Shown here: piece by piece, positions 9,331 to 36,397 of the stretch
Position numbering within the stretch: position 1 is the stretch's first letter
Layout of the letters: each line of letters starts with the position of its first letter
Source: Scyliorhinus canicula
Taxonomy: Eukaryota
Assembly (NCBI RefSeq): GCF_902713615.1
Contig: NC_052157.1
Location: forward strand, 5,572,327 to 5,636,326
Length of the DNA stretch: 64,000 bases
Reading direction: 5' to 3'
Notes under the pieces: model-generated
What the model saw: the letters and a program-made list of their open reading frames with translations, nothing else
What the model was told of the DNA's origin: nothing
The model's database searches: none
Program-made: the position numbers and the translations under genes

Positions 9331-9504
9331 CAAGAGTTTAAAATGTGACCGATTTCTTATGGAATGTAATTCAACCCCAAAACCGTTTCCCTCATTTTCA
9401 GGCATCTTACTTACACCGACTCGACTTCCGGGCGGCGAGCGAGGAGGTCGCAGGGAGAGGGGCTCCCGCAAGCGCCAGGAAGGAACCCCCCCGACAGGCC
9501 GGAC

Positions 9505-9680
9505 GGCGGAGGAGGAGCGGGCGGCAACGGCGGAGGAGGAGCGGGCGGCAACGGCGGAGGAGCGGGCGACAACGGAGGAGCAGCGGGTGGCAACGGCGGG
9601 CGGCAGCGGAGGAGAAGCGGAGGAGGAGCGGGCGGCAACTGAGGAGGAGCGGGCGGCGGCGGAAGGCGGAGGCGAGGAGC
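9505..9680 (+). repeat. GC-rich ~24-nt tandem array in L1 5' UTR
   Basis: About 7 imperfect units of ggcggaggaggagcgggcggcaac. Confidence 0.85.
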
Positions 9681-9780
9681 GACGGCGACAGGGAGGCCCA
9701 GCAGCGGCAGGTCCAACCCCTCTCTCCCCCCCCCCCCCCCCACGCGGGCCGGGAACGGTGCGGCAGCGGCGGGCCCTCTT

Positions 9781-10243
9781 CCCCCCCCCCCCAAACCAGC
9801 AGCGGGACACCACCCCCCCCCCCCAACCAGCAGCGGGGACACCAACCCCCCCCCCCCAACCAGCAGCGGGGACACCAACCCCCCCCCCCCCCCCCCCCCC
9901 CAACCAGCAGCGGGGACACCAACCCCCCCCCCCCCCCCCCCCAACCAGCAGCGGGGACACCAACCCCCCCCCCCCCCCCCAACCAGCAGCGGGGACACCA
10001 ACCCCCCCCCCCCCCCCAACCAGCAGCGGGGACACCAACCCCCCCCCCCCCCAACCAGCAGCGGGGACACCACCCCCCCCCCCCCCCCCCCCAACCAGCA
10101 GCGGGGACACCAACCCCCCCCCCAACCAGCAGCGGGGACACCAACCCCCCCCCCCCCCCCAACCAGCAGCGGGGACACCAACCCCCCCCCCAACCAGCAG
10201 CGGGGACACCCCCCCCCCCCCCCCCCCCCCAACCAGCAGCCCC
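9781..10243 (+). repeat. tandem array of aaccagcagcggggacacc units separated by variable poly-C runs (L1 5' UTR)
   Basis: 12 near-identical units plus one partial, counted directly. Confidence 0.95.
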
Positions 10244-10479
10244 ACTCGCCCCTCCCCCTCCCCCCAACTGCAGTGACCACCACGTGGCAAGGACAAAGGG
10301 GGACTCTCTCTCTCTCTCTCCTGGGCGAGTGGAGAGAGAAAACAAAAGAAAAAAGAGACTTATATTTCTGTTCTTTTTTTAAAATAAAAACCCAAAAGAA
10401 AACTGGTAAAGAGAAAAGGGGTGAAATAAAGGGGTAAAGGAAAGAAGGGGGGAAATAAATTTTTCATTTAAAAAAAAAA

Positions 10480-10490
10480 ATATATACATA

Positions 10491-10537
<47 letters not shown>
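10480..10537. repeat. (TA)n microsatellite in L1 5' UTR
   Basis: About 20 perfect TA units plus degenerate flank. Confidence 0.95.
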
Positions 10538-10540
<3 letters not shown>

Positions 10541-10597
10541 TAAAATTTAAATAGGGTGCGGAAAAGGGGGAAAAGAAGAACAAGGAGAGAAGAAACG

Positions 10598-11623
10598 ATG
10601 AAGGGGAAGGGGGAGAAAAAAATGCCAGAAGGGACCCAAGAGAAAGGGGGCACCGGAGGTGGACGGGGCAAAGGGCAAACCAGCTTGGGCGAACGAGTCA
10701 ACACGCGAAGCAGCGGGAAGAATGTATCGCCGCATCCAAAAGAGCTGGACGGGCGGGCAACCTCTCCCCTGGGGTTAGAGGGGGGCGTGAATTGGAAGGA
10801 AGCCATTGCCGAGGTGGTGAGGGAGCAGCTGCAGGCAATCAAGGCAGAGTTAAAAGCAGACACAGAGGCCGCAGCACAGGCAGCAGTGACCAGGGCCATG
10901 TCAGGGGTGCAGCAGGCTCTGACCAGAATGGAGGAGAAAGTGGATGCCCAAGGGAAGATACTGGAAGCCCAAGGGAAGATACTGGAAGCCCAAGGGGCAA
11001 CCATTAAAGAGCTGGAGAAGGCAGCGACTGACGTGAGCGACCGGGTCATGTCCCTGGAGAGGGAAATGGCGAAACTGAGTGCAACACAGGGGAGCCTGAA
11101 GGGCAGGGTAGACGACCAGGAGATCAACTCGAGAAGGCAAAACATTAAGATAGTGGGCCTGCCAGAGGGGATAGAGGGTAGAAATCCCACAACATTCGTG
11201 GCTGCGATGCTGGGCTCCTTAGTGGGGCGGGAAACTTTTCCCACCCCACCGGAAATGCACAGAGCTCATCGGTCACTGCGCCCGAAGCCCAAGGAAGGGG
11301 AAAAACCGAGAGCAGTTATAGCCAGACTGCACCGGTACCGGGATAGGGAGACAATCCTGCGCTGGGCCAAGGAGAATAGAGCCTGCAATTGGGACGGGCA
11401 CGCCATCAGAATCTACGAGGATTTTGGAGCGGACATAGCTAAGAGACGGGCGGAGTTCAACAGAGCGAAAGCAGCTCTCTATAAGAACAAAGTACGTTTT
11501 GGTATGCTGTACCCAGCAAAACTCTGGGTCACATACCAACACAAGGAATATTTCTTTACAGCCCCTGCCGAGGCGAATAGATTCGTTGAGGAGCACGGGC
11601 TGGAAAAACGCCATGGGAAGTAG
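10598..11623 (+). CDS. L1 ORF1p (coiled coil, RRM, CTD)
   Basis: Uninterrupted ORF with heptads, SRRQNIKIVGLPEG, RAHR, IRIYEDF and LYPAKL motifs; first in-frame ATG at 10598 (the track start at 10556 is GTG). Confidence 0.93.
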   Translation: MKGKGEKKMPEGTQEKGGTGGGRGKGQTSLGERVNTRSSGKNVSPHPKELDGRATSPLGLEGGVNWKEAIAEVVREQLQAIKAELKADTEAAAQAAVTRAMSGVQQALTRMEEKVDAQGKILEAQGKILEAQGATIKELEKAATDVSDRVMSLEREMAKLSATQGSLKGRVDDQEINSRRQNIKIVGLPEGIEGRNPTTFVAAMLGSLVGRETFPTPPEMHRAHRSLRPKPKEGEKPRAVIARLHRYRDRETILRWAKENRACNWDGHAIRIYEDFGADIAKRRAEFNRAKAALYKNKVRFGMLYPAKLWVTYQHKEYFFTAPAEANRFVEEHGLEKRHGK

Positions 11624-12396
11624 GGACGAGGGGCCCATGGCAAGGAGATACGTCATGCCGACGGGGGGGTGGGGAGGGGCGAGGCAAAGCCAGCCCCCTC
11701 CCCCCTGGCAGGAGCACCCAGGAAAAACAACCCAATGCCCAAGGGCCCGCTCCAGGTGGGAGGCCAGGCCCCGGCACGAGGGAACGGGAGTACTGGAGAG
11801 GGGAGAGGGGAAGGGGGACAGCAACCTCCGAGCGGGGAGCCACCGTGCTAGCAGGAAAGCTAGCGAAGGGGACGCGCAACAGAGCAGGGCCGCAGCGCAC
11901 CCCCAACAGGGGGGAAGGCGCCAGGCAGGGGAGGGGGGGGATCACCCATCAAAGGTGGGAGAGCAAATGGGGACAGGAATGGGGGAGAGAGGGGCAATGG
12001 AGGGGTACACAGGGGTATCCCCGAAAGGGATAGAGTGGGGGGGGGGGGGGGCACTCGGGGGGCGAGAGACCAGGGAGGGGAAATGCAGGGACGAAGGGAC
12101 AAAAGAGGCCAGAAAGGGAATAGGGCCACAAAGTGCCACAGACAAGGGCTCGAAACAGGGAACTGCTGCAAACACCCACCCAGTACGGTCTGTGGGTGAA
12201 GGGGCCCCCCGGAGTGCAGGGGGCTACCCGCGTGGCGGACACACAGTGGACGGCCATGGCGGGTGTCCCCGGGACAAGGGGGAACCCCGGAGCGCAGGGA
12301 CCCGACCGCATGGGGAGAGCAGTGATAGTGGACATCCTGGACGGCCCCCTAACAAAGGGAAACCCCAGAGGGCAGGGGCGCGTCCACCGGACAAAT

Positions 12397-15300
12397 ATGG
12401 TTAACCCCACAGGAGCAAGGGGGCAGAAGCCCCCCACCAGAATAGTCACCTGGAACGTAAGGGGACTTAATGGCCCAGTGAAGAGATCTAGAGTCCTCAC
12501 CCACCTTAGAAACATGAGGGCCGACATAGTCTTCCTCCAAGAGACGCACTTGAGGGAGCAGGACCAACTGCGGGTAAGAAAGGGCTGGGTGGGACAAACC
12601 TATCATTCCTGTTATGGGGCAAGGGCCAGGGGGGTGGCGATCCTGATTGGCAAGAGGACAATGTTTAGGGCGACAAAGACGGTTACGGACCCAGGGGGAC
12701 GGTATGTCATGGTCAGCGGGGCCCTGGATGGGGCGCCGGTAGTCCTAGTTAACGTGTATGCGCCCAACTGGGACGACACGAGCTTCATCCAAAAGACCAT
12801 GGCAGAAATCCCGGACATAGCGACGCACCGACTAATCATGGGGGGGGACTTCAACTGTGTACAGGACCCAACGACGGACAGATCAAACCCCAGAACGGGG
12901 AAAACCTCAAACATGGCAAGGGAACTCAGTCACTATATGGAGCAGATGGGAGCAGTAGACCCCTGGAGATTCGCCCACCCGGGGGAGAAAGAATTCTCTT
13001 TCTTCTCCCCAGTACACAACGTGTACACCAGAATTGACTTCTTTGTGGTGGGGAAAACGGTGCTTCCAGAGATAGACAAGGTGGAATACTCCGCAATTGT
13101 GATATCAGACCACGCCCCACACTACATGGATGTGCGGCTAGAGACGGGAAGGGCCCAGCGCCCCAAATGGAGGTTGGACGGTGCCTTACTAGCTGACAAG
13201 GCCTTCAGCGAAAGGATAGCGCGGGCCATAGCGGAGTACACTGAGATCAACCAAAACGGGGAGGTCTCACCCTCCACGTTCTGGGAAGCGCTTAAGGCCG
13301 TACTAAGAGGGGAAATCATAGCCTACAAAGCGCAAAGAGATAGGGAGGAAAGGGTGGCTAGGCAGAAGCTGGTCGACTCCATACTGGAGGTAGACCATAA
13401 ATACTCCGAGGCCCCGACCGTAGAACTCCTGGCGGAGAGGAAAGAATTACAAAGGAACTTTGACCTGCTCTCCACCAGGAAAGCAGTACACCAACTCCGC
13501 CAGGCACGCGGGGCCCTATACGAACACGGAGACAAAGCCAGCCGCCTGTTGGCCCACCAGCTGAGAAAGCAGGCAGCCAGCAGAGAAATTGCGCAAATCA
13601 GAGATACCAGAGGCACGTTGGAAACAGAACCAGAGAGGATTAACAAAACCTTCAAGGCCTTCTACCAAGAGCTGTACACCTCAGAGCCCCCAACGGGGAA
13701 GGCTGGGATGAACCGGTTTCTTGACGGACTGGACATACCAGTTGTGGGAGAGGGCAGAAAACGGGATCTGGAAGCACCACTAGCACTGGGAGAGATCATG
13801 GACAGCATTAGCTCCATGCAGGCGGGGAAGGCGCCGGGACCGGACGGATTCCCGGCGGACTTCTACAAAAAATTTGCGACAGCGCTGGCCCCGCACCTGC
13901 GGGAGATGTTCACAGACTCGCTAGCTAGGGGCACATTGCCACCCACGTTAGCACAGGCCTCAATCTCGCTGATACCTAAGAAAGACAAAGACCCAACGGA
14001 ATGTGGGTCATACAGACCCATATCTCTGCTGAATGCAGACGCCAAAATACTGGCCAAAATCCTAGCCAAGAGGCTAGAAGACTGTGTACCTGAGGTGGTC
14101 ACAGAGGACCAGACGGGCTTTGTCAAAGGTAGACAGCTTACCGCGAACATCAGGCGCCTGCTGAACGTGATAATGACCCCCTCCGGGGAGAGAACACAAG
14201 AGGTGATCGTCTCCCTGGACGCAGAAAAGGCCTTCGACAGAGTCGAGTGGAAATACCTCATAGAGGTACTGGAGCGGTTCGGGCTTGGAACAGGGTTCAC
14301 CGCTTGGGTAAAGCTCCTGTACAACGCTCCCATGGCGAGTGTACAGACCAACAATACCAACTCCCAATACTTCCAGCTGCACAGGGGCACCAGACAAGGA
14401 TGCCCACTGTCCCCGCTGCTGTTCGCACTAGCAATTGAACCGCTAGCAATCGCGCTCAGGGCAGCAAAAATTGGAGGGGGATCCGAAGGGGAGGTAGAGA
14501 GCACAGAGTCTCACTCTATGCGGATGATCTGCTCCTCTATATCTCGGACCCACAAAGCAGCATGGACGGAATCATCGCGCTCCTGAAAGAGTTTGGAGCC
14601 TTCTCGGGCTACAAACTCAACATGAGCAAAAGTGAGATCTTCCCAGTACACCCGCAAGGGGGGGGGGGGGGGGGGGGGGGGCAGCACTAAAGGGGCTGCC
14701 GTTCAATCAAGCCCGACATAAATTCCGCTACCTGGGGATCCAAATAGCCCATGACTGGAAAGGGATCCACAAATGGAACCTCACCAGCCTGACGGAGGAA
14801 GTTAAAAAGGACCTGCAAAGATGGAACACACTCCCGCTCTCCCTCGCGGGGAGAGTTCAGACGATCAAAATGAACGTACTGCCCAGGTTCCTCTTCCTGT
14901 TTAGATCCATTCCGATCTACATCCCCAAGGCCTTTTTCAAAGCGCTGGACAAACTCATCATGGCGTTCGTATGGGGGGGTAAAAATGCTAGGATCCCAAA
15001 GAAGGTCTTACAAAAAACAAAAACCAGGGGAGGGCTAGCCCTCCCGAATCTACAATTCTACCACTGGGCAGCAACAGCCGAGCGAGTAAGGGGATGGATC
15101 CAGGAGCCAGAGGCTGAGTGGGTGCGTGCGGAGGAGGCCTCCTGCATGGGAACCTCCCTCCGGGCCCTCGCCACGGCAGCACTCCCATCCCCACCCAAAA
15201 AACACTCCAGCAGCCCAGTGGTGACAGCCACCCTCCAATCCTGGAACCAACTGCGGCAGCAACTTGGCCTGACCAAAATGTCGAACAGGGCTCCCATCTG

Positions 15301-16234
15301 CAACAACCATAGGTTCACACCAGCACTGACTGACGCCACCTTCAAAAGGTGGAGGCAGGACGGGGGGACACTGACAGTCAGGGACCTATACACGGACGAC
15401 AGGATCGCAACACTGGACGAACTGACAGAGAAGTTTCAGCTAGCTGGGGGGAACGAGCTACGGTACCTGCAGCTCAAAAACTTCCTACGAAAGGAGACAA
15501 GGACGTACCCACAACCGCCACGACAGACACTACTGGAAGACCTACTGGACGCAAGTATCCTAGAGAAAGGGAACTGTAGTGACATGTATGACCGACTGGT
15601 AGATAGGGACGACACCGTACTGGACGCAACAAGAAGGAAATGGGAGGACGACCTGGGGATGGAGATAGGGTGGGGACTCTGGAGCGAAGCACTGCATAGG
15701 GTCAACTCCACCTCCACGTGCGCAAGGCTCAGCCTGACGCAACTAAAAGTGGTACATAGAGCCCACTTAACAAGAACCCGTATGAGTAGGTTCTTCCCGG
15801 AGGTGGAAGACAGATGTGAACGGTGCCAAAGAGGCCCGGCCAACCACGCCCACATGTTCTGGTCTTGCCCCAGACTCGTGGAGTACTGGACAGCCTTCTT
15901 CGAGGTTATGTCCAAAGTGGTGGGAGTGAGGGTGGAGCCATGCCCGATAGTGGCGGTCTTCGGGGTTTCAGAACAGCCAGATCTATTCCTGGGGAGGAGG
16001 GCGGACGCCCTTGCCTTTGCCTCCCTGATCGCCCGCCGTAGAATCCTGTTTGGCTGGCGGTCAGCAGCACCGCCCAGAGCTGCGGACTGGCTGTCCGACC
16101 TCTCGGAATCTCTCCAAATGGAGAAAATCAAATTTGCCATCCGAGGGTCGGACGACGGCTTCCACAGAACGTGGGAGCCATTCATGCAACTGTTCCGGGA
16201 CCTATTTGTGGCCAATGTACAAGAGGAAGAATAG
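12397..16234 (+). CDS. L1 ORF2p (APE endonuclease, reverse transcriptase, CCHC knuckle), two homopolymer frameshifts
   Basis: TWNVRGLN, LQETH, GGDFN, RIDF, SDH; KAPGPDG, YRPISLLN, LDAEKAFD, RQGCPLSP; YADD in shifted frame at about 14517; CERC..HMFWSC. Frame breaks at the A5 run (14466-14470) and the G24 run (14658-14681). Start codon inferred. Confidence 0.9.
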
Positions 16235-16688
16235 TCGGGGGAAGGTAGCGGGAGGGGGGGGGGGGGGGGGGGCTACAGGTTCGGTACGGGGGTTCGATGG
16301 CTAGCTAAGGCCCAAAACCAAACTAAATAAACATGTTGAGGGGGGGGGGGGGGGGGGGGGGGGCGGGCGCAGTTACTACTACGAAGATGCTTACCTGTAA
16401 ATATGTATGTTAATTTTTGCGTGTTTGTTTGTTGTTTTTTTTTTGTTCTTTTTCTCTCCTAACAATTTGTAATTTGTTCAATATAAAATATGAAAACTGA
16501 ATAAAAACATTTATAAAAAAAAATCTTACTTACACCATCCAAAAGGGAACTCGGACATATTTTTCTTAGTATTGTGGGAGCTGTAAATTTATTCCAATGA
16601 AGATTTTTTGCTTTTAGTTGCATTTGGATAAAAGAACAATGTTAATAATTATTAACCAGTTGGCTTGAGAAGAGTATAATGCTGGTAC

Positions 16689-31660: not shown

Positions 31661-32987
31661 ATTAATTGTCAAGGTGGGTCTGAAGGTCCCTTCAACCAAC
31701 CAGAAGGATCCAGAAGCAAGATCTTTTTACCTTTCTGTAAAGACAGTGATTGCAGCTTTTAAAAGAAAAAAATATAATAATAAAATAACTTAAAAGTTTT
31801 AACCTGAAACAGTGGTTATTCCAAAGTCTACTTTACTTACTTAGCAACGCAGGACCCAGGATCGATGTTACTAAGTGGTAAGTAGGTTAAATCTTCTGTG
31901 AAGGTCTGGGTTATACAGGGGGATAACCTGAAAATATAGTTTGACCTCAATAGCACCCACCGAAGCCTGCATAGGAGTCAGGAAGTGAGAATCCCTGTTC
32001 ATCATTTAGAATGTCGGCCCTTTTTGGTTTAGGGGGACTTCTAAGAATAGTGGTGAGTTTTCAACAACAGGGGATATGAGAAAGCTCTGGCTGGTAACAA
32101 TAGGGAAAATCCCAAGATATTCTATAAGTATATCAATGGGAAAAGGATAACCAGGAAAGAGTAGGGCCCATTAAAGACTAAGGGGGAAATCTATGGGTAG
32201 AGCCAGAGGACATTGGTAGGCTGTTGAATTAATATTTCACATTTGTCTTCACCCAAGAGAATGAGGAGGTAGTTATGGAACTTGGGAAGAGGGATTGAGG
32301 TTCTTGAGCAAATTGTCACAGGGAGTGACAAGGTTTGGAGGTATTGGCGGGCTTAAAAGTGGACAAATCTCCAGGTCCGGATGAATTGTGTCCCAGGCTG
32401 AGTGGGAGGTGAGGGAGTGATTGCCAGGGCTTTGACTCAAATTTTTAATTCCTCCCTGGCCACGGGGAGGTGCCAGAGGACTGGAGAACAACTACTGTGG
32501 TCCCACTATTTGAGAAAGGTTGTAGGACCAAGCCAGGGATCTACAGACCAGTGAGTCTCACATCAGTGGTGGGGAAACTACTGGAGAAGATTCTGAAGGA
32601 GAGAATCTTATCTCCATTTGTTAGAGGCAAGGTTTGATCAGGGATAGTCAGCAGGGCTTTGTCAGAGGGAGGTCACGCCTAACAAATTTGATTGAATTTT
32701 TTGAGCATGTAATCAAGTGCATAGATGAGGGTAGTGCAGTTGATGTAGTTTACATGGATTTCAGCAAAGCCTTTGACAATGTCCCACTTGGGAGACTTAT
32801 TAAGAAGGCAAATGCACATGGGTTACAGAGCAATTTGATAGGTGGGTTCATAATTGGCTTAGTGGTAGGAAACAGAGGGTGGTGATAGACGACTGCTTTA
32901 AGATCTGGAAGCCAGTGCCAGTGTCGTACCACAGGGATCCATGCTGGGCCCCCTAATGTTTGTCATTTATACAAAATGACATAGGTG

Positions 32988-35697
32988 GGGACTTCCGGTG
33001 ATGGCAGGCAGGAGGCAGCAGCACATTGGAGGGCTCCCATTCGGGAATGGCATTTTCAAGGTCGAACGCCTGGTCCCAGGGGTAACAGATGGCAAAAGCA
33101 GGGAGAAGGCACAGTGAAGGGAGATGTCGAAAACAAGTTTAAAAAACGGCCATGAAAAAAGCAGCTGAAAGTCCGTTGGGGAGTTGAAAGGTCACCGCAG
33201 GGACGGCAAGAAAAATGGAGGCTGGGGCACCAGGTAGGGCGCATTGCTTACGGCTGAAGAAATGACTAAGGTGATGGCCGCGGAACTCGAAAGGCAGTTC
33301 ACAAAACACTTGGAGGCGATGAGGAAGGAGATGGGGGCAGTATTGAAAGTGCCGGTGGAGGAGGCGATTGCCCCGGTGCGGGCGGCAGTACTGAGCGCAG
33401 TGGCGGAGGTGCGGGAGCAAGGCGAGGCGCTGAAGGAAGTGGAAGAGACAGTATTGCAGCACAGTGATCAACTTACCTCGATGGGGAAGGAGATGCGGAA
33501 GGTGATGGAGATCAACAAGGATCTGCGAGCCCCAAAATGGACAACTTGGAAAACAGATCTAGGCAACAGTGTAGCCATCTGGGGTGGCCACGTCACGATT
33601 ACAAAATGGACACTTTGCAAAGAATGAAGGGAAAAATGGACAATGCTGAGAAAGCAAGCAGGTGCAAGGTTTATCTATTGATTAGAGCTATAGCTCCCAG
33701 ACAAGACAGATACTGCAAAGCCATTACCATATTAATGAGCCATCTCCGGGGACAAAAGAGAAACGTTTAGGTAATCGATACGAAAGCAGACACCCCGGCG
33801 CCAGAGGAGACTAGAACAAAGCAGGCCAACGGCCACCTAGGGCCTGCCCAGCAATCAGGGCAGCCACCCCTTTATTGGAGGAAATCGATACCAATGATCA
33901 GGATACAGTCCAATTAATTGGGATCAAGTTCAAGGACCGCCCAAAAGCACGCAAAGCCCCCTTTGGGTATAATAGGAAGCCCCCAAGAGAGAATCGTTCT
34001 TCTTGGCCTTGGCTCTCAGCGACGAGTGGCCTGCCAAGCAGCTGCACCAGAACAATTAAGTCCAAAGTCAACGCACGCTACGAGATAGAAGCTCCTAGCT
34101 ACTATTCCGTACCAGCTCGACCCCAGCAGCCTCAGAACCAGACAACGGCCATTGTTCCTCTGACTGAGTGGGCGCCCGAAGCTAAGTATAGGCTTTAGTA
34201 GTAGTGATAGTTTAGTTGGTAGAGTTTGTGCATGAGTATAATTGACTGTGTGTGTAAATAAATAAGCATTGATTTCGAACTTACTAACTGGTGTATCGAG
34301 TCTTTGATCAGTATTCGGTTCTGAACCTTGTGGCGGTATCGAAAGATACCTGGCGACTCTTGAGCAAACGTAATTAGAATTAAGGATGGCGACCATATTA
34401 ACCGCCATAAACAGAGACAATTAAAGAGAGAACACAACAAGCAACAACAGAATCTGAGGATTGTGGGTCTTCCCGAAGGAGTGGAAGGCCCGAGGCCGAC
34501 TGAGTATTTTGCCACGATGTTGGCCAAGCTATTGGGGGAGGGGGATGATCCCTCCCGATATGAACTGGATTTAGCTTATCGGTTGTGGAGGCCTGTACCA
34601 AAGGAGAGTGAGCCACCAAGAGTAGTGACTGTGTTTTCGTAGGTAGTGTGTGAAGAAGAAGGTCCTGTGCTGGGCAAAGCAGAAGCGTTTGGTGCAGTGG
34701 GCTGGAGCCTATATATATACGCATATATCAGGACTTTACGGTGGAGCAGTCAAGGAGGCGGGCTGCCTTCAGCCGGGTGAAGAAGGCACTGTACGTTAGT
34801 AAGGTGCAGTGCGGCATAGTATACCCAGCTAAGTTGAGGGTGACCTACAAATCCAAGGACTTTTATTTCGGGACAGCGGAAACAGCGGAGGAGTTTGCGA
34901 AGGCAGAAGGACTGTGGCTGAATTGAGAAATGGTCATGTACCGATGTAGCCTCACGTAGCTGTATTTTTTTCACTGTGGCTGCTGTATGTGCTAAATGAG
35001 CCAATGTTGTATATACTTGGGCAAGGGAAGAGAGGGGACTTTCACTTGCAATGATGGTTCTTTGGGGCTTGGGTGTGTATGCGGGGTTTGTGTGCTAAAG
35101 GGGATTTCTTGGTTTTCCTGGGCTGGGGCCGGGCAAGGGGAAAAAAAAAAAAAGAGGCCCAGGCGGGGTCTTCCACGCTGGCCGGTTTAAGCCAGCCAGT
35201 GAACGGGAGTGAGGTGGGGGGAGGAACTGCGGCCATCAGAGCCTGGCAGAAAAGGTTCCGGTGAGTCTAGCCGGGATGGAAAGATGGGGAAGGAACAGAG
35301 GTTGGGGGGATGAGTTTGGTAAGAGGAAGTGGAGGGGAGGAGTCGGGGAGGGGGGGGGGCTTGCAATGGATAGGTGTCATTTGTGGTACTCTTTCGGAGA
35401 TTGGATGGCATTGAATGTTAGGGGGGATGGGGGGACTCTATAGGTTAATGGTGACCATAGGCGATTCCCAAATCCTTTTTCTTTTATTTCTCCTTTGTTT
35501 GTCCCACTGTGGGAGGGTTTGTTTTATTGGATGTTTATATTGTTAGGTGGGTCATTGCTTTGGATGGTGGGAGGATGGGATTGTTGTTGTTGATAAGGAA
35601 AGAGACTTTGTATTTGTTACCATTTACTGCTTGTGGGTGGGGTGTAAATTCTAAAGAAAATGTGAAAATGGAGAATAAAAATGTTTTACAAAAAAAA
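32988..35697 (+). mobile_element. ORF1-only L1-derived retroelement (HAL1-like)
   Basis: 10-bp TSD gacataggtg (32978-32987, 35698-35707); starts gggacttccgg; degenerate ORF1 from about 33150 to 34926; about 770-nt 3' region without ORF2; aataaa plus A tail. Confidence 0.85.
33570..34446 (+). mobile_element. solo LTR (877 bp), Gypsy/ERV-type
   Basis: tgtagcc...agcaaca termini; 4-bp TSD acag (33566-33569, 34447-34450); removing it restores ENRSRQQNLRIVGLPEG of the host ORF1. Strand tentative. Confidence 0.88.
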
Positions 35698-36292
35698 GAC
35701 ATAGGTGAAAATGTGGGAGGTAGGATCAGTAAGTTTGCAGGTGAAAGAAAGACTGGCCGGGTGGTTAACAGTGAGGTTGAGTGTCTTAGATTACAGGAAG
35801 ATATAGACGGGATGGTCAAATGGGCGGAAAAGTGGCTGATAGAATTTAACCCTGAAAAGTGTGAGCTCATACACTTTGGAAGGAGTCATTTAACAAGAAA
35901 GTATACTGCGAAAGGTCTGACATGGGAAGTTCCAAAAAACAAAGGGACCTTGGCATGTTTGTTCATGGATCTCTGAAGGCCGACGGGCAGGTTAATAGGG
36001 TGGTGAAAAAGACATAAGGGACACTCGCTTTTATCAATCAGGGCACAGATTACAAAAGCAGGGAGGGCATGTTGGAGTTTTATAGAACTTTGGTGAGGTC
36101 ACAGCTGGAGTACTGTGTGCAGTTCTGGTCACCACATTATAGGATGGATGTGATTGCACTGCAGAGAAGAGTCACCACAATGTTGCCTGGGATGGAACAT
36201 TTCAGTTATAAAGAGAGGTTGGATAGGCTTGGGTTGCTGTCTCTGGAGCAGAGAAGATGTAAGTGTGACCTGATTGAGGTATACAAGACTAT

Positions 36293-36397
36293 GATGACTC
36301 ACCTGATGAAGGAGCTCCGAAATCTAGTGATTCCAAATAAACCTTTTGGACTTTAACCTGGTATCCACCCTAGTCCAACACGAGCATTTCCATATCA
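36293..36397 (+). mobile_element. decayed Penelope-type pLTR fragment with hammerhead core remnant
   Basis: cacctgatgaaggagctccgaaatctagtg..aaacc..ggactttaacctgg; interrupts the CR1 at EVYK(I)M. Confidence 0.65.

What the first reader, a model, noticed from the sequence alone, without database searches (positions are those of the whole stretch)
32978..35707. ORF1-only 'half-L1' (HAL1-like) retroelement in a shark genome
Seen: after removing the solo LTR the element is about 1.83 kb. It has its own 10-bp TSD, an intact-looking 5' start, a degenerate L1-type ORF1 (ENRSRQQNLRIVGLPEG..IRIYQDF..VYPAKLRVTY..AEEFAKAEGL), then about 770 nt with no recognisable EN/RT sequence, AATAAA and an A tail. 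Known: HAL1 elements are ORF1-only non-autonomous L1 derivatives, best described in mammals. Inference: an independently arisen non-autonomous family that supplies its own ORF1p and borrows ORF2p from an L1 such as the one at 9418-16522.
Basis: partly seen in the sequence, partly recalled or inferred. Interest (0 to 1): 0.72.

Follow-up and report, generated by a model that had tools for sequence, protein, structure and literature searches.

The report
Dead ORF1-only L1 copy, catshark
This is a decayed 1.83-kb jumping-gene copy, later split by a solo LTR, that keeps the RNA-binding gene (ORF1) and an L1-like tail of an L1 element but lacks the copying-enzyme gene; it is probably one more member of a catshark "half-L1" family that this scan has already noted elsewhere.

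Summary
Between 10-bp target-site duplications (15 bp with one mismatch) lies a 1829-bp element, counted without a nested 877-bp solo LTR. It has a 137-nt leader, a broken L1-type ORF1, a 763-nt G-rich non-coding tail, AATAAA and an 8-A tail. No endonuclease or reverse-transcriptase remnant was found.

The ORF1 is about 49% identical to the ORF1 of the window's L1. It is about 81% identical to an intact 305-aa protein of Scyliorhinus torazame (XP_072362954.1). A profile of these ORF1s hits human L1 ORF1p structures at E 1.6e-27. The last ~60 nt of the tail resemble the 3' end of the window's L1.

Support for a family is therefore indirect:
- at least three related gene models exist in the sister species;
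- the scan has eight earlier notes on other DNA of this genome describing ORF1-only elements, most about 1.8 kb, some followed up as multi-copy. I did not check those notes.

Verdict: most likely a dead member of a shark HAL1-like family, a new member of a known kind. This copy is ordinary.

The parts
32973..32987 (+). 5' target-site duplication (10 bp perfect at 32978-32987; 15 bp with one mismatch)
   Evidence: D8
32988..33124 (+). 5' leader (137 nt) upstream of the ORF1 start codon
   Evidence: start codon placed by alignment to P0001
33125..33569 (+). ORF1, 5' part: N-terminus and coiled coil up to ...KMDNLENRSRQQ; frameshifts and one in-frame stop
33570..34446 (+). Nested solo LTR (877 bp, TGTAGC...GCAACA, 4-bp TSD ACAG at 33566-69 and 34447-50). 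It inserted after the ORF1-only element; its strand is taken from TATAA lying upstream of AATAAA on the + strand
   Evidence: no second copy in the window
34451..34926 (+). ORF1, 3' part: RRM and C-terminal domain, NLRIVGLPEG... to ...AEGLWLN, stop at 34924-26; two frameshifts and one stop
34927..35689 (+). Non-coding tail (763 nt): 35% G with many G-runs, internal A13 at 35141-53, T-rich end, AATAAA at 35674-79; the last ~60 nt resemble the 3' end of the window's L1
35690..35697 (+). A tail (8 A), 10 nt after AATAAA
35693..35707 (+). 3' target-site duplication
32634..32977 (+). Host: left part of a decayed LINE reverse-transcriptase gene (RVT_1 profile 37-99)
35708..35976 (+). Host: right part of the same decayed RT (the scanned piece 35698-35973 matches RVT_1 profile 165-194)

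Best explanation
This is a dead copy of a non-autonomous, ORF1-only L1 derivative: a shark counterpart of mammalian HAL1.

Inferred steps:
1. A ~1.8-kb polyadenylated RNA (short leader, ORF1, L1-type G-rich 3' UTR) was reverse-transcribed into an AAAA-type target inside an older LINE RT gene.
2. The ORF2 protein came from an autonomous L1 acting in trans, primed on the A tail.
3. The RNA's own ORF1p would have coated it in cis.

Shown by the nesting and the breaks: the copy then decayed by frameshifts and stops. Later an LTR retroelement hit it and collapsed to a solo LTR.

Shown: the anatomy, the L1 ORF1 identity, the absence of ORF2, the TPRT hallmarks, the order of nesting and an intact close relative in S. 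torazame. Inferred: family status with a shared junction, trans-mobilisation, and cis use of ORF1p.
For: - TSD, A tail and AATAAA are present, and the target reads TAC|AAAA.
- ORF1 pieces match the window L1's ORF1 at 48-49% identity, E 5e-32. They match S. torazame P0001 (305 aa, intact, XP_072362954.1) at 81-82% over the RRM and C-terminal pieces and 80% over 250 aligned columns.
- P0001 hits human L1 ORF1p 2ykp at E 3.6e-5. A 16-sequence profile hits it at E 1.6e-27, and also mouse ORF1p. Eight of the 16 relatives match Pfam Transposase_22.
- In the tree, the element groups with P0001, P0025 and P0053 at 100/97 support. That means at least three gene models of this lineage in the sister species.
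- No ORF2 remnant was found.
- The tail's last ~60 nt are the best match to the window L1's 3' end among 46 A-run sites (score 26, against at most 18 for the rest; alignment). Both tails share the layout G-runs, then a T-rich stretch, then AATAAA 10 nt before the A tail.
- Leads only, not checked here: eight earlier notes describe ORF1-only elements elsewhere in this genome, seven of them 1.7-1.96 kb and one a 1030-bp copy with a ~740-nt UTR. Some follow-ups report several insertion sites and presence in related sharks.
Against:
- No second copy lies in the 64-kb window.
- Only two clusters of close protein relatives exist in the word-search database, and none is from this genome.
- This copy is dead, so it says nothing about present activity.
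- TSDs alone do not exclude a later internal deletion.
Confidence: 0.72

Rival explanations
1. A one-off: a full-length L1 that lost ORF2 through an internal deletion. The loss could have happened after insertion, or in the RNA or cDNA of this single event (aberrant splicing or template jump). No family propagates the structure.
For: TSDs would look the same. No second copy lies in the window. I could not read other copies. The tail's 3' end looks like an L1 3' UTR, as expected for a deleted L1.
Against: A deletion would have to spare the whole ORF1 with its stop codon and leave no trace of EN/RT. Earlier notes report several separately TSD-flanked elements, five of them within ~10 bp of my 1829 bp, and one with a ~740-nt UTR after the ORF1 stop; I did not check these.
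Confidence: 0.12
2. A processed pseudogene (retrocopy) of a host gene derived from L1 ORF1, in the manner of L1TD1. Its mRNA would be copied by L1 machinery; it would not be a self-propagating transposon family.
For: The closest relatives are annotated as ordinary 'uncharacterized protein' gene models in S. torazame. Two of them are isoforms spliced to other sequence (P0025, P0053). A retrocopy would also carry a TSD and an A tail.
Against: The tail ends like an L1 3' UTR. The lineage has several loci on one chromosome in the sister species. Annotation pipelines often call transposon ORFs genes.
Confidence: 0.08
3. A composite: the true element ends at the internal A13 run (35141-53), and the following ~540 nt are a 3' transduction or a template-switch partner.
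For: An A13 run sits 215 nt after the ORF1 stop.
Against: No AATAAA or ATTAAA stands before the A13; the only signal in the tail is at 35674. The part after the A13 carries the L1-like G-runs and the L1-like 3' end.
Confidence: 0.05

Closest known systems
Mammalian HAL1 (half-L1) elements: non-autonomous L1 derivatives that encode only ORF1p and arose several times in mammals (Smit 1999 and Bao & Jurka 2010, as cited in PMC5753468)
   Same: L1-type ORF1 only, no ORF2, an A tail, a TSD, and presumed trans-mobilisation by L1 ORF2p.
   Different: The host is a cartilaginous fish. The ORF1 belongs to a Scyliorhinus L1 lineage and is only remotely like mammalian ORF1p (26.9 bits), so any likeness is by parallel origin, not descent. 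Copy number and selection on ORF1 were not measured here.
The autonomous-type L1 in the same window (9418-16522)
   Same: ORF1 of the same architecture (coiled coil, RRM, C-terminal domain) at 48-49% identity. Sister clades in the ORF1 tree (97/94). G-rich 3' UTR with a similar last ~60 nt and AATAAA spacing.
   Different: It carries EN, RT and zf-RVT, a 1.1-kb repetitive 5' region and a ~770-nt inter-ORF spacer. There is no nucleotide similarity outside the 3' end.
S. torazame XP_072362954.1 (P0001), with XP_072358813.1 and XP_072359545.1
   Same: The same ORF1 lineage: 80% identity over 250 columns, and the same start and end of the protein.
   Different: P0001 is intact (305 aa) and annotated as a gene. 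Its flanks could not be read, so whether it is followed by the same tail is unknown.
L1TD1, a domesticated L1 ORF1-derived host gene of mammals (PMC4161310)
   Same: An ORF1-derived coding sequence without ORF2.
   Different: L1TD1 is a single host gene. This locus is a TSD-flanked, polyadenylated, decayed insertion inside another repeat.

Membership tests
HAL1-type ORF1-only non-autonomous L1 derivative | Encodes an L1-type ORF1p | tested here: met
   49% identity to the window L1's ORF1, E 5e-32. The family profile hits human and mouse L1 ORF1p structures, E 1.6e-27. P0001 alone gives E 3.6e-5.
HAL1-type ORF1-only non-autonomous L1 derivative | No ORF2 (endonuclease / reverse transcriptase) between ORF1 and the 3' end | tested here: met
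   tblastn with the window L1's ORF2 gives E > 1. No Pfam family in the tail's ORFs on either strand.
HAL1-type ORF1-only non-autonomous L1 derivative | Inserted as a unit by L1-type target-primed reverse transcription (TSD, A tail, AAAA-type target) | tested here: met
   TSD of 10 bp, or 15 bp with one mismatch; A8 tail 10 nt after AATAAA; target TAC|AAAA. A later internal deletion is not excluded by this alone.
HAL1-type ORF1-only non-autonomous L1 derivative | Repeated family whose copies share the ORF1-to-3'-UTR junction | not testable with these tools
No relative in metagenome contigs. No second copy in the window. Earlier scan notes claim several copies; unchecked.
HAL1-type ORF1-only non-autonomous L1 derivative | ORF1 kept intact or under purifying selection in source copies | tested here: inconclusive
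   An intact 305-aa relative exists in S. torazame. No DNA was available for dN/dS. This copy itself is broken.
HAL1-type ORF1-only non-autonomous L1 derivative | Mobilised in trans by ORF2p of an autonomous L1 | not testable with these tools
   Inference from the A tail, the TSD and the L1-like 3' end. It needs a retrotransposition assay.
L1 ORF1p (coiled coil + RRM + C-terminal domain) | RRM and C-terminal domain alignable to solved L1 ORF1p | tested here: met
   The profile covers chain residues 2-206 of 2ykp, and also 2ldy, 2jrb and 2w7a.
L1 ORF1p (coiled coil + RRM + C-terminal domain) | Match to Pfam Transposase_22 (PF02994) | tested here: inconclusive
   No hit for the element's pieces, the window L1's ORF1 or P0001. 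Eight of 16 aligned relatives do match, best E 1.3e-5.
L1 ORF1p (coiled coil + RRM + C-terminal domain) | N-terminal coiled coil | tested here: met
   Profile positions ~30-135 hit many solved coiled coils, including the L1 ORF1p coiled coil 6fia. No heptad analysis was run.
Solo LTR (the nested insert) | TG...CA ends with short inverted repeat, short TSD, internal TATA and poly(A) signal, no coding part | tested here: met
   TGTAGC...GCAACA ends, ACAG duplication, TATAA at 33968, AATAAA at 34257. Removal restores ORF1 exactly. No matching full element or second LTR in the window, so the parent family is unknown.

The most novel reading that the evidence does not exclude
ORF1-only 'half-L1' parasites arose independently in cartilaginous fish. 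The lineage may still be coding in Scyliorhinus, given the intact 305-aa ORF1 and gene models in S. torazame. If so, carrying one's own ORF1p while stealing ORF2p is a recurrent strategy across jawed vertebrates, and it could be tested in a non-mammalian system.
Probability: 0.55. Interest if true: 0.5.

Novelty: new member of a known kind. Interest (0 to 1): 0.38.

Why it matters
In the papers I could read, HAL1 elements are described only from mammals (PMC5753468). My searches of the held open-access library turned up no paper linking HAL1 to sharks or other fishes among those listed. A shark family would show that ORF1-only parasitism of L1 recurs over some 450 million years of vertebrate history. 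It would also bear on why an element keeps ORF1p when poly(A) RNAs can be mobilised without it. This copy adds one more dated example with a clear nesting order: old LINE, then half-L1, then LTR element. It is dead and has no effect of its own. The family has already been flagged several times by this scan.

Tried and rejected
- A word search with the 69-aa C-terminal piece found no candidates; the length window is 38-120 aa.
- A word search with P0001 found only P0001, P0025 and one distant hit.
- A metagenome scan with P0001 found no relative.
- The big representatives search was not run. The protein is already identified, and representatives at 50% identity would not resolve this family.
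- blastn of the element against the window gave only the self hit.
- Tail against the window L1's inter-ORF spacer: no similarity (z 1.65). This gives no support to an origin of the tail from that spacer by premature polyadenylation, though the two lineages are too distant for non-coding alignment.
- 5' leader against the L1 5' region: nothing (z 0.5).
- Rfam on 32700-36000: nothing.
- The 3'-transduction reading of the A13 run was rejected for lack of a poly(A) signal before it.
- The search of earlier findings by sequence and by relatives came back blank.
- Bao & Jurka 2010 (PMC2923044) is not held.
- The broken ORF1 was searched piece by piece, as separate rows by reference. It was joined only with X at each break, inside one script for the tree.
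Full report
**1. What is there**

- The stretch 32978-35707 is bounded by GACATAGGTG on both sides. The repeat finder extends the repeat to 15 nt with one mismatch, AAAATGACATAGGTG against AAAAAGACATAGGTG (D8).
- The target therefore read TAC|AAAA. This is close to the TT|AAAA preference of L1 endonuclease, which I cite from general knowledge.
- The flanks are two parts of one decayed LINE reverse-transcriptase gene on the + strand: Pfam RVT_1 profile positions 37-99 on the left and 165-194 on the right. The element landed inside an older repeat.
- Earlier notes place the window in an SPG11 intron. I did not check that.

**2. The nested insert**

- From 33570 to 34446 lies an 877-bp insert with TGTAGC...GCAACA ends, a 4-bp duplication ACAG, a TATAA at 33968 and an AATAAA at 34257.
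- Removing it, with one ACAG, joins ...KMDNLENRSRQQ to NLRIVGLPEG.... That matches the intact relative P0001 without a gap.
- This is what a solo LTR looks like. Its parent family is unknown, and there is no other copy in the window.
- The nesting order is: old LINE, then the ORF1-only element, then the LTR element.

**3. The element without the LTR** (1829 bp)

- A 137-nt leader comes first.
- ORF1 runs from 33125 (MSKTS..., aligned with the MSRVS... start of P0001) to the stop at 34924-26. It has at least five frameshifts and two in-frame stops.
- A 763-nt tail follows, then AATAAA at 35674-79 and A8 at 35690-97, 10 nt later.
- The tail has 35% G with many G-runs, an internal A13 at 35141-53 and a T-rich end.
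- The tail has no similarity to the ORF2 of the window's L1, no Pfam family in any of its ORFs and no Rfam family.

**4. Identity of ORF1**

- The pieces match the ORF1 of the window's L1 (10556-11623) at 48-49% identity, E 5e-32.
- Pfam recognises neither that ORF1 nor ours.
- The window's ORF1 and P0001 both hit human L1 ORF1p (2ykp) at E 7e-5 and 3.6e-5.
- A 16-sequence profile led by P0001 hits human and mouse L1 ORF1p at E 1.6e-27 and 1.7e-21, covering the end of the coiled coil, the RRM and the C-terminal domain.
- Eight of the 16 aligned relatives match Pfam Transposase_22. The protein is an L1-type ORF1p.

**5. Relatives**

- I ran a word search with an alignment that held the window's ORF1 and our pieces as separate rows. 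It found a 305-aa intact 'uncharacterized protein' of Scyliorhinus torazame (P0001, XP_072362954.1).
- P0001 is 81-82% identical to our RRM and C-terminal pieces and 80% identical over 250 aligned columns.
- Two further S. torazame models (P0025 and P0053; XP_072358813.1 and XP_072359545.1) share its N-terminal 173 residues and then run into unrelated sequence.
- In a maximum-likelihood tree of 55 ORF1s, our element groups with these three (100/97). That group is sister to two more S. torazame proteins (100/100). The six together are sister to the clade holding the window's L1 ORF1 (97/94). No rows were left out. Our row was the pieces joined with X at the breaks.
- So the lineage is catshark-specific among what the database holds. 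It has at least three loci in the sister species and at least one intact reading frame.

**6. The tail is L1-like at its end**

- The local alignment of the tail to the 288-nt 3' UTR of the window's L1 stands out from shuffles (z 6.5), but it aligns only G-runs.
- More telling are the last ~60 nt before the A tail, which align.
- Among the 46 other places in the window where a run of seven or more A follows, the L1's 3' end is the best match to ours: score 26. The next best, 18, is its own reverse strand, and the rest score 16 or less.
- Both tails have G-runs, then a T-rich stretch, then AATAAA 10 nt before the A tail.
- This fits 'ORF1 plus an L1 3' UTR'. It agrees with earlier follow-up notes that speak of 'the tail of a shark L1'.
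- The tail shows no likeness to the L1's long inter-ORF spacer (z 1.65). At this distance between lineages that proves little.

**7. The decisive question could not be answered directly**

- Whether other copies carry the same ORF1-to-tail junction needs DNA of other copies.
- A metagenome scan found nothing, and the window has no second copy.
- What remains is indirect. The sister-species proteins are one part. The other is eight earlier notes of this scan on other pieces of the same genome. Seven describe ORF1-only elements of 1825, 1828, 1838, 1839, 1873, 1733 and 1955 letters. One describes a 5'-truncated copy with 'about 740 nt UTR' after the ORF1 stop.
- Follow-ups to those notes report three or more insertion sites, presence in a sister species, or an abundant family. 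These are unchecked AI notes.
- The only thing I could test against them is that my own measurements (1829 bp; 763-nt tail) fit their numbers.

**8. Mechanism**

- Most likely (0.72) this is a dead member of a HAL1-like family.
- Inferred steps: a ~1.8-kb polyadenylated RNA, bound in cis by its own ORF1p, was copied into an AAAA-type nick by ORF2p from an autonomous L1.
One of the breaks lies at a G-run and could be an assembly error. Its ORF1 is only 49% identical. So its lineage, not that copy, is the candidate, and the true parent lineage is unknown.
- Rivals are a one-off internal deletion (0.12), a retrocopy of an ORF1-derived host gene (0.08) and a composite ending at the A13 run (0.05). 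The last is disfavoured because no poly(A) signal precedes the A13 and the L1-like end lies after it.

**9. Comparison and novelty**

- HAL1 is defined as a non-autonomous L1 derivative encoding only ORF1p that arose several times in mammals (PMC5753468).
- The present element works like one and meets the structural criteria. The family criterion was not testable here.
- It is not a descendant of mammalian HAL1: its ORF1 sits among catshark L1 ORF1s.
- Among the papers listed by my searches of the held library, none links HAL1 to sharks or other fishes. That is weak evidence of absence, and Repbase and Dfam could not be consulted.
- I rate it a new member of a known kind, already noted repeatedly by this scan, with modest interest.

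**10. Conduct**

- Broken ORF1 pieces were searched apart by reference.

Noticed in passing
window 12133-16234: The ORF2 of the window's L1 is not one frame as assembled. EN and the first part of RT are in one frame up to 14586. The YADD motif (VSLYADDLLLY) lies in a second frame. After a G-run near 14680 a third frame continues into the ORF 14870-16234.
   Followed up: partly
window 11624-12396: The same L1 has an unusually long inter-ORF spacer (~770 nt) that is purine-rich and has only 7% T. Its 5' region (about 9418-10555) holds GC-rich repeats that read as long proline/glycine-rich ORFs on both strands.
   Followed up: no
window 16235-16522 and 35630-35697: The 3' ends of the autonomous-type L1 and of the ORF1-only element share a ~60-nt terminal motif, with AATAAA placed 10 nt before the A tail. 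This may be a conserved 3'-end signal of this catshark L1 group.
   Followed up: partly
P0025 / P0053 (S. torazame XP_072358813.1, XP_072359545.1): Two separate gene models in the sister species fuse the first 173 residues of this ORF1 lineage to the same unrelated 25-residue end. This could be a duplicated chimeric transcript or exonised copies.
   Followed up: no
window 33533-33552 and 33602-33621: A 20-nt stretch of ORF1 just before the LTR recurs at 85% identity just inside the LTR (repeat finder D5). It is probably chance.
   Followed up: no
window 32634-32977 and 35708-36356: The host of the insertion is a decayed LINE reverse-transcriptase gene with several frameshifts. Its clade was not determined.
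   Followed up: partly
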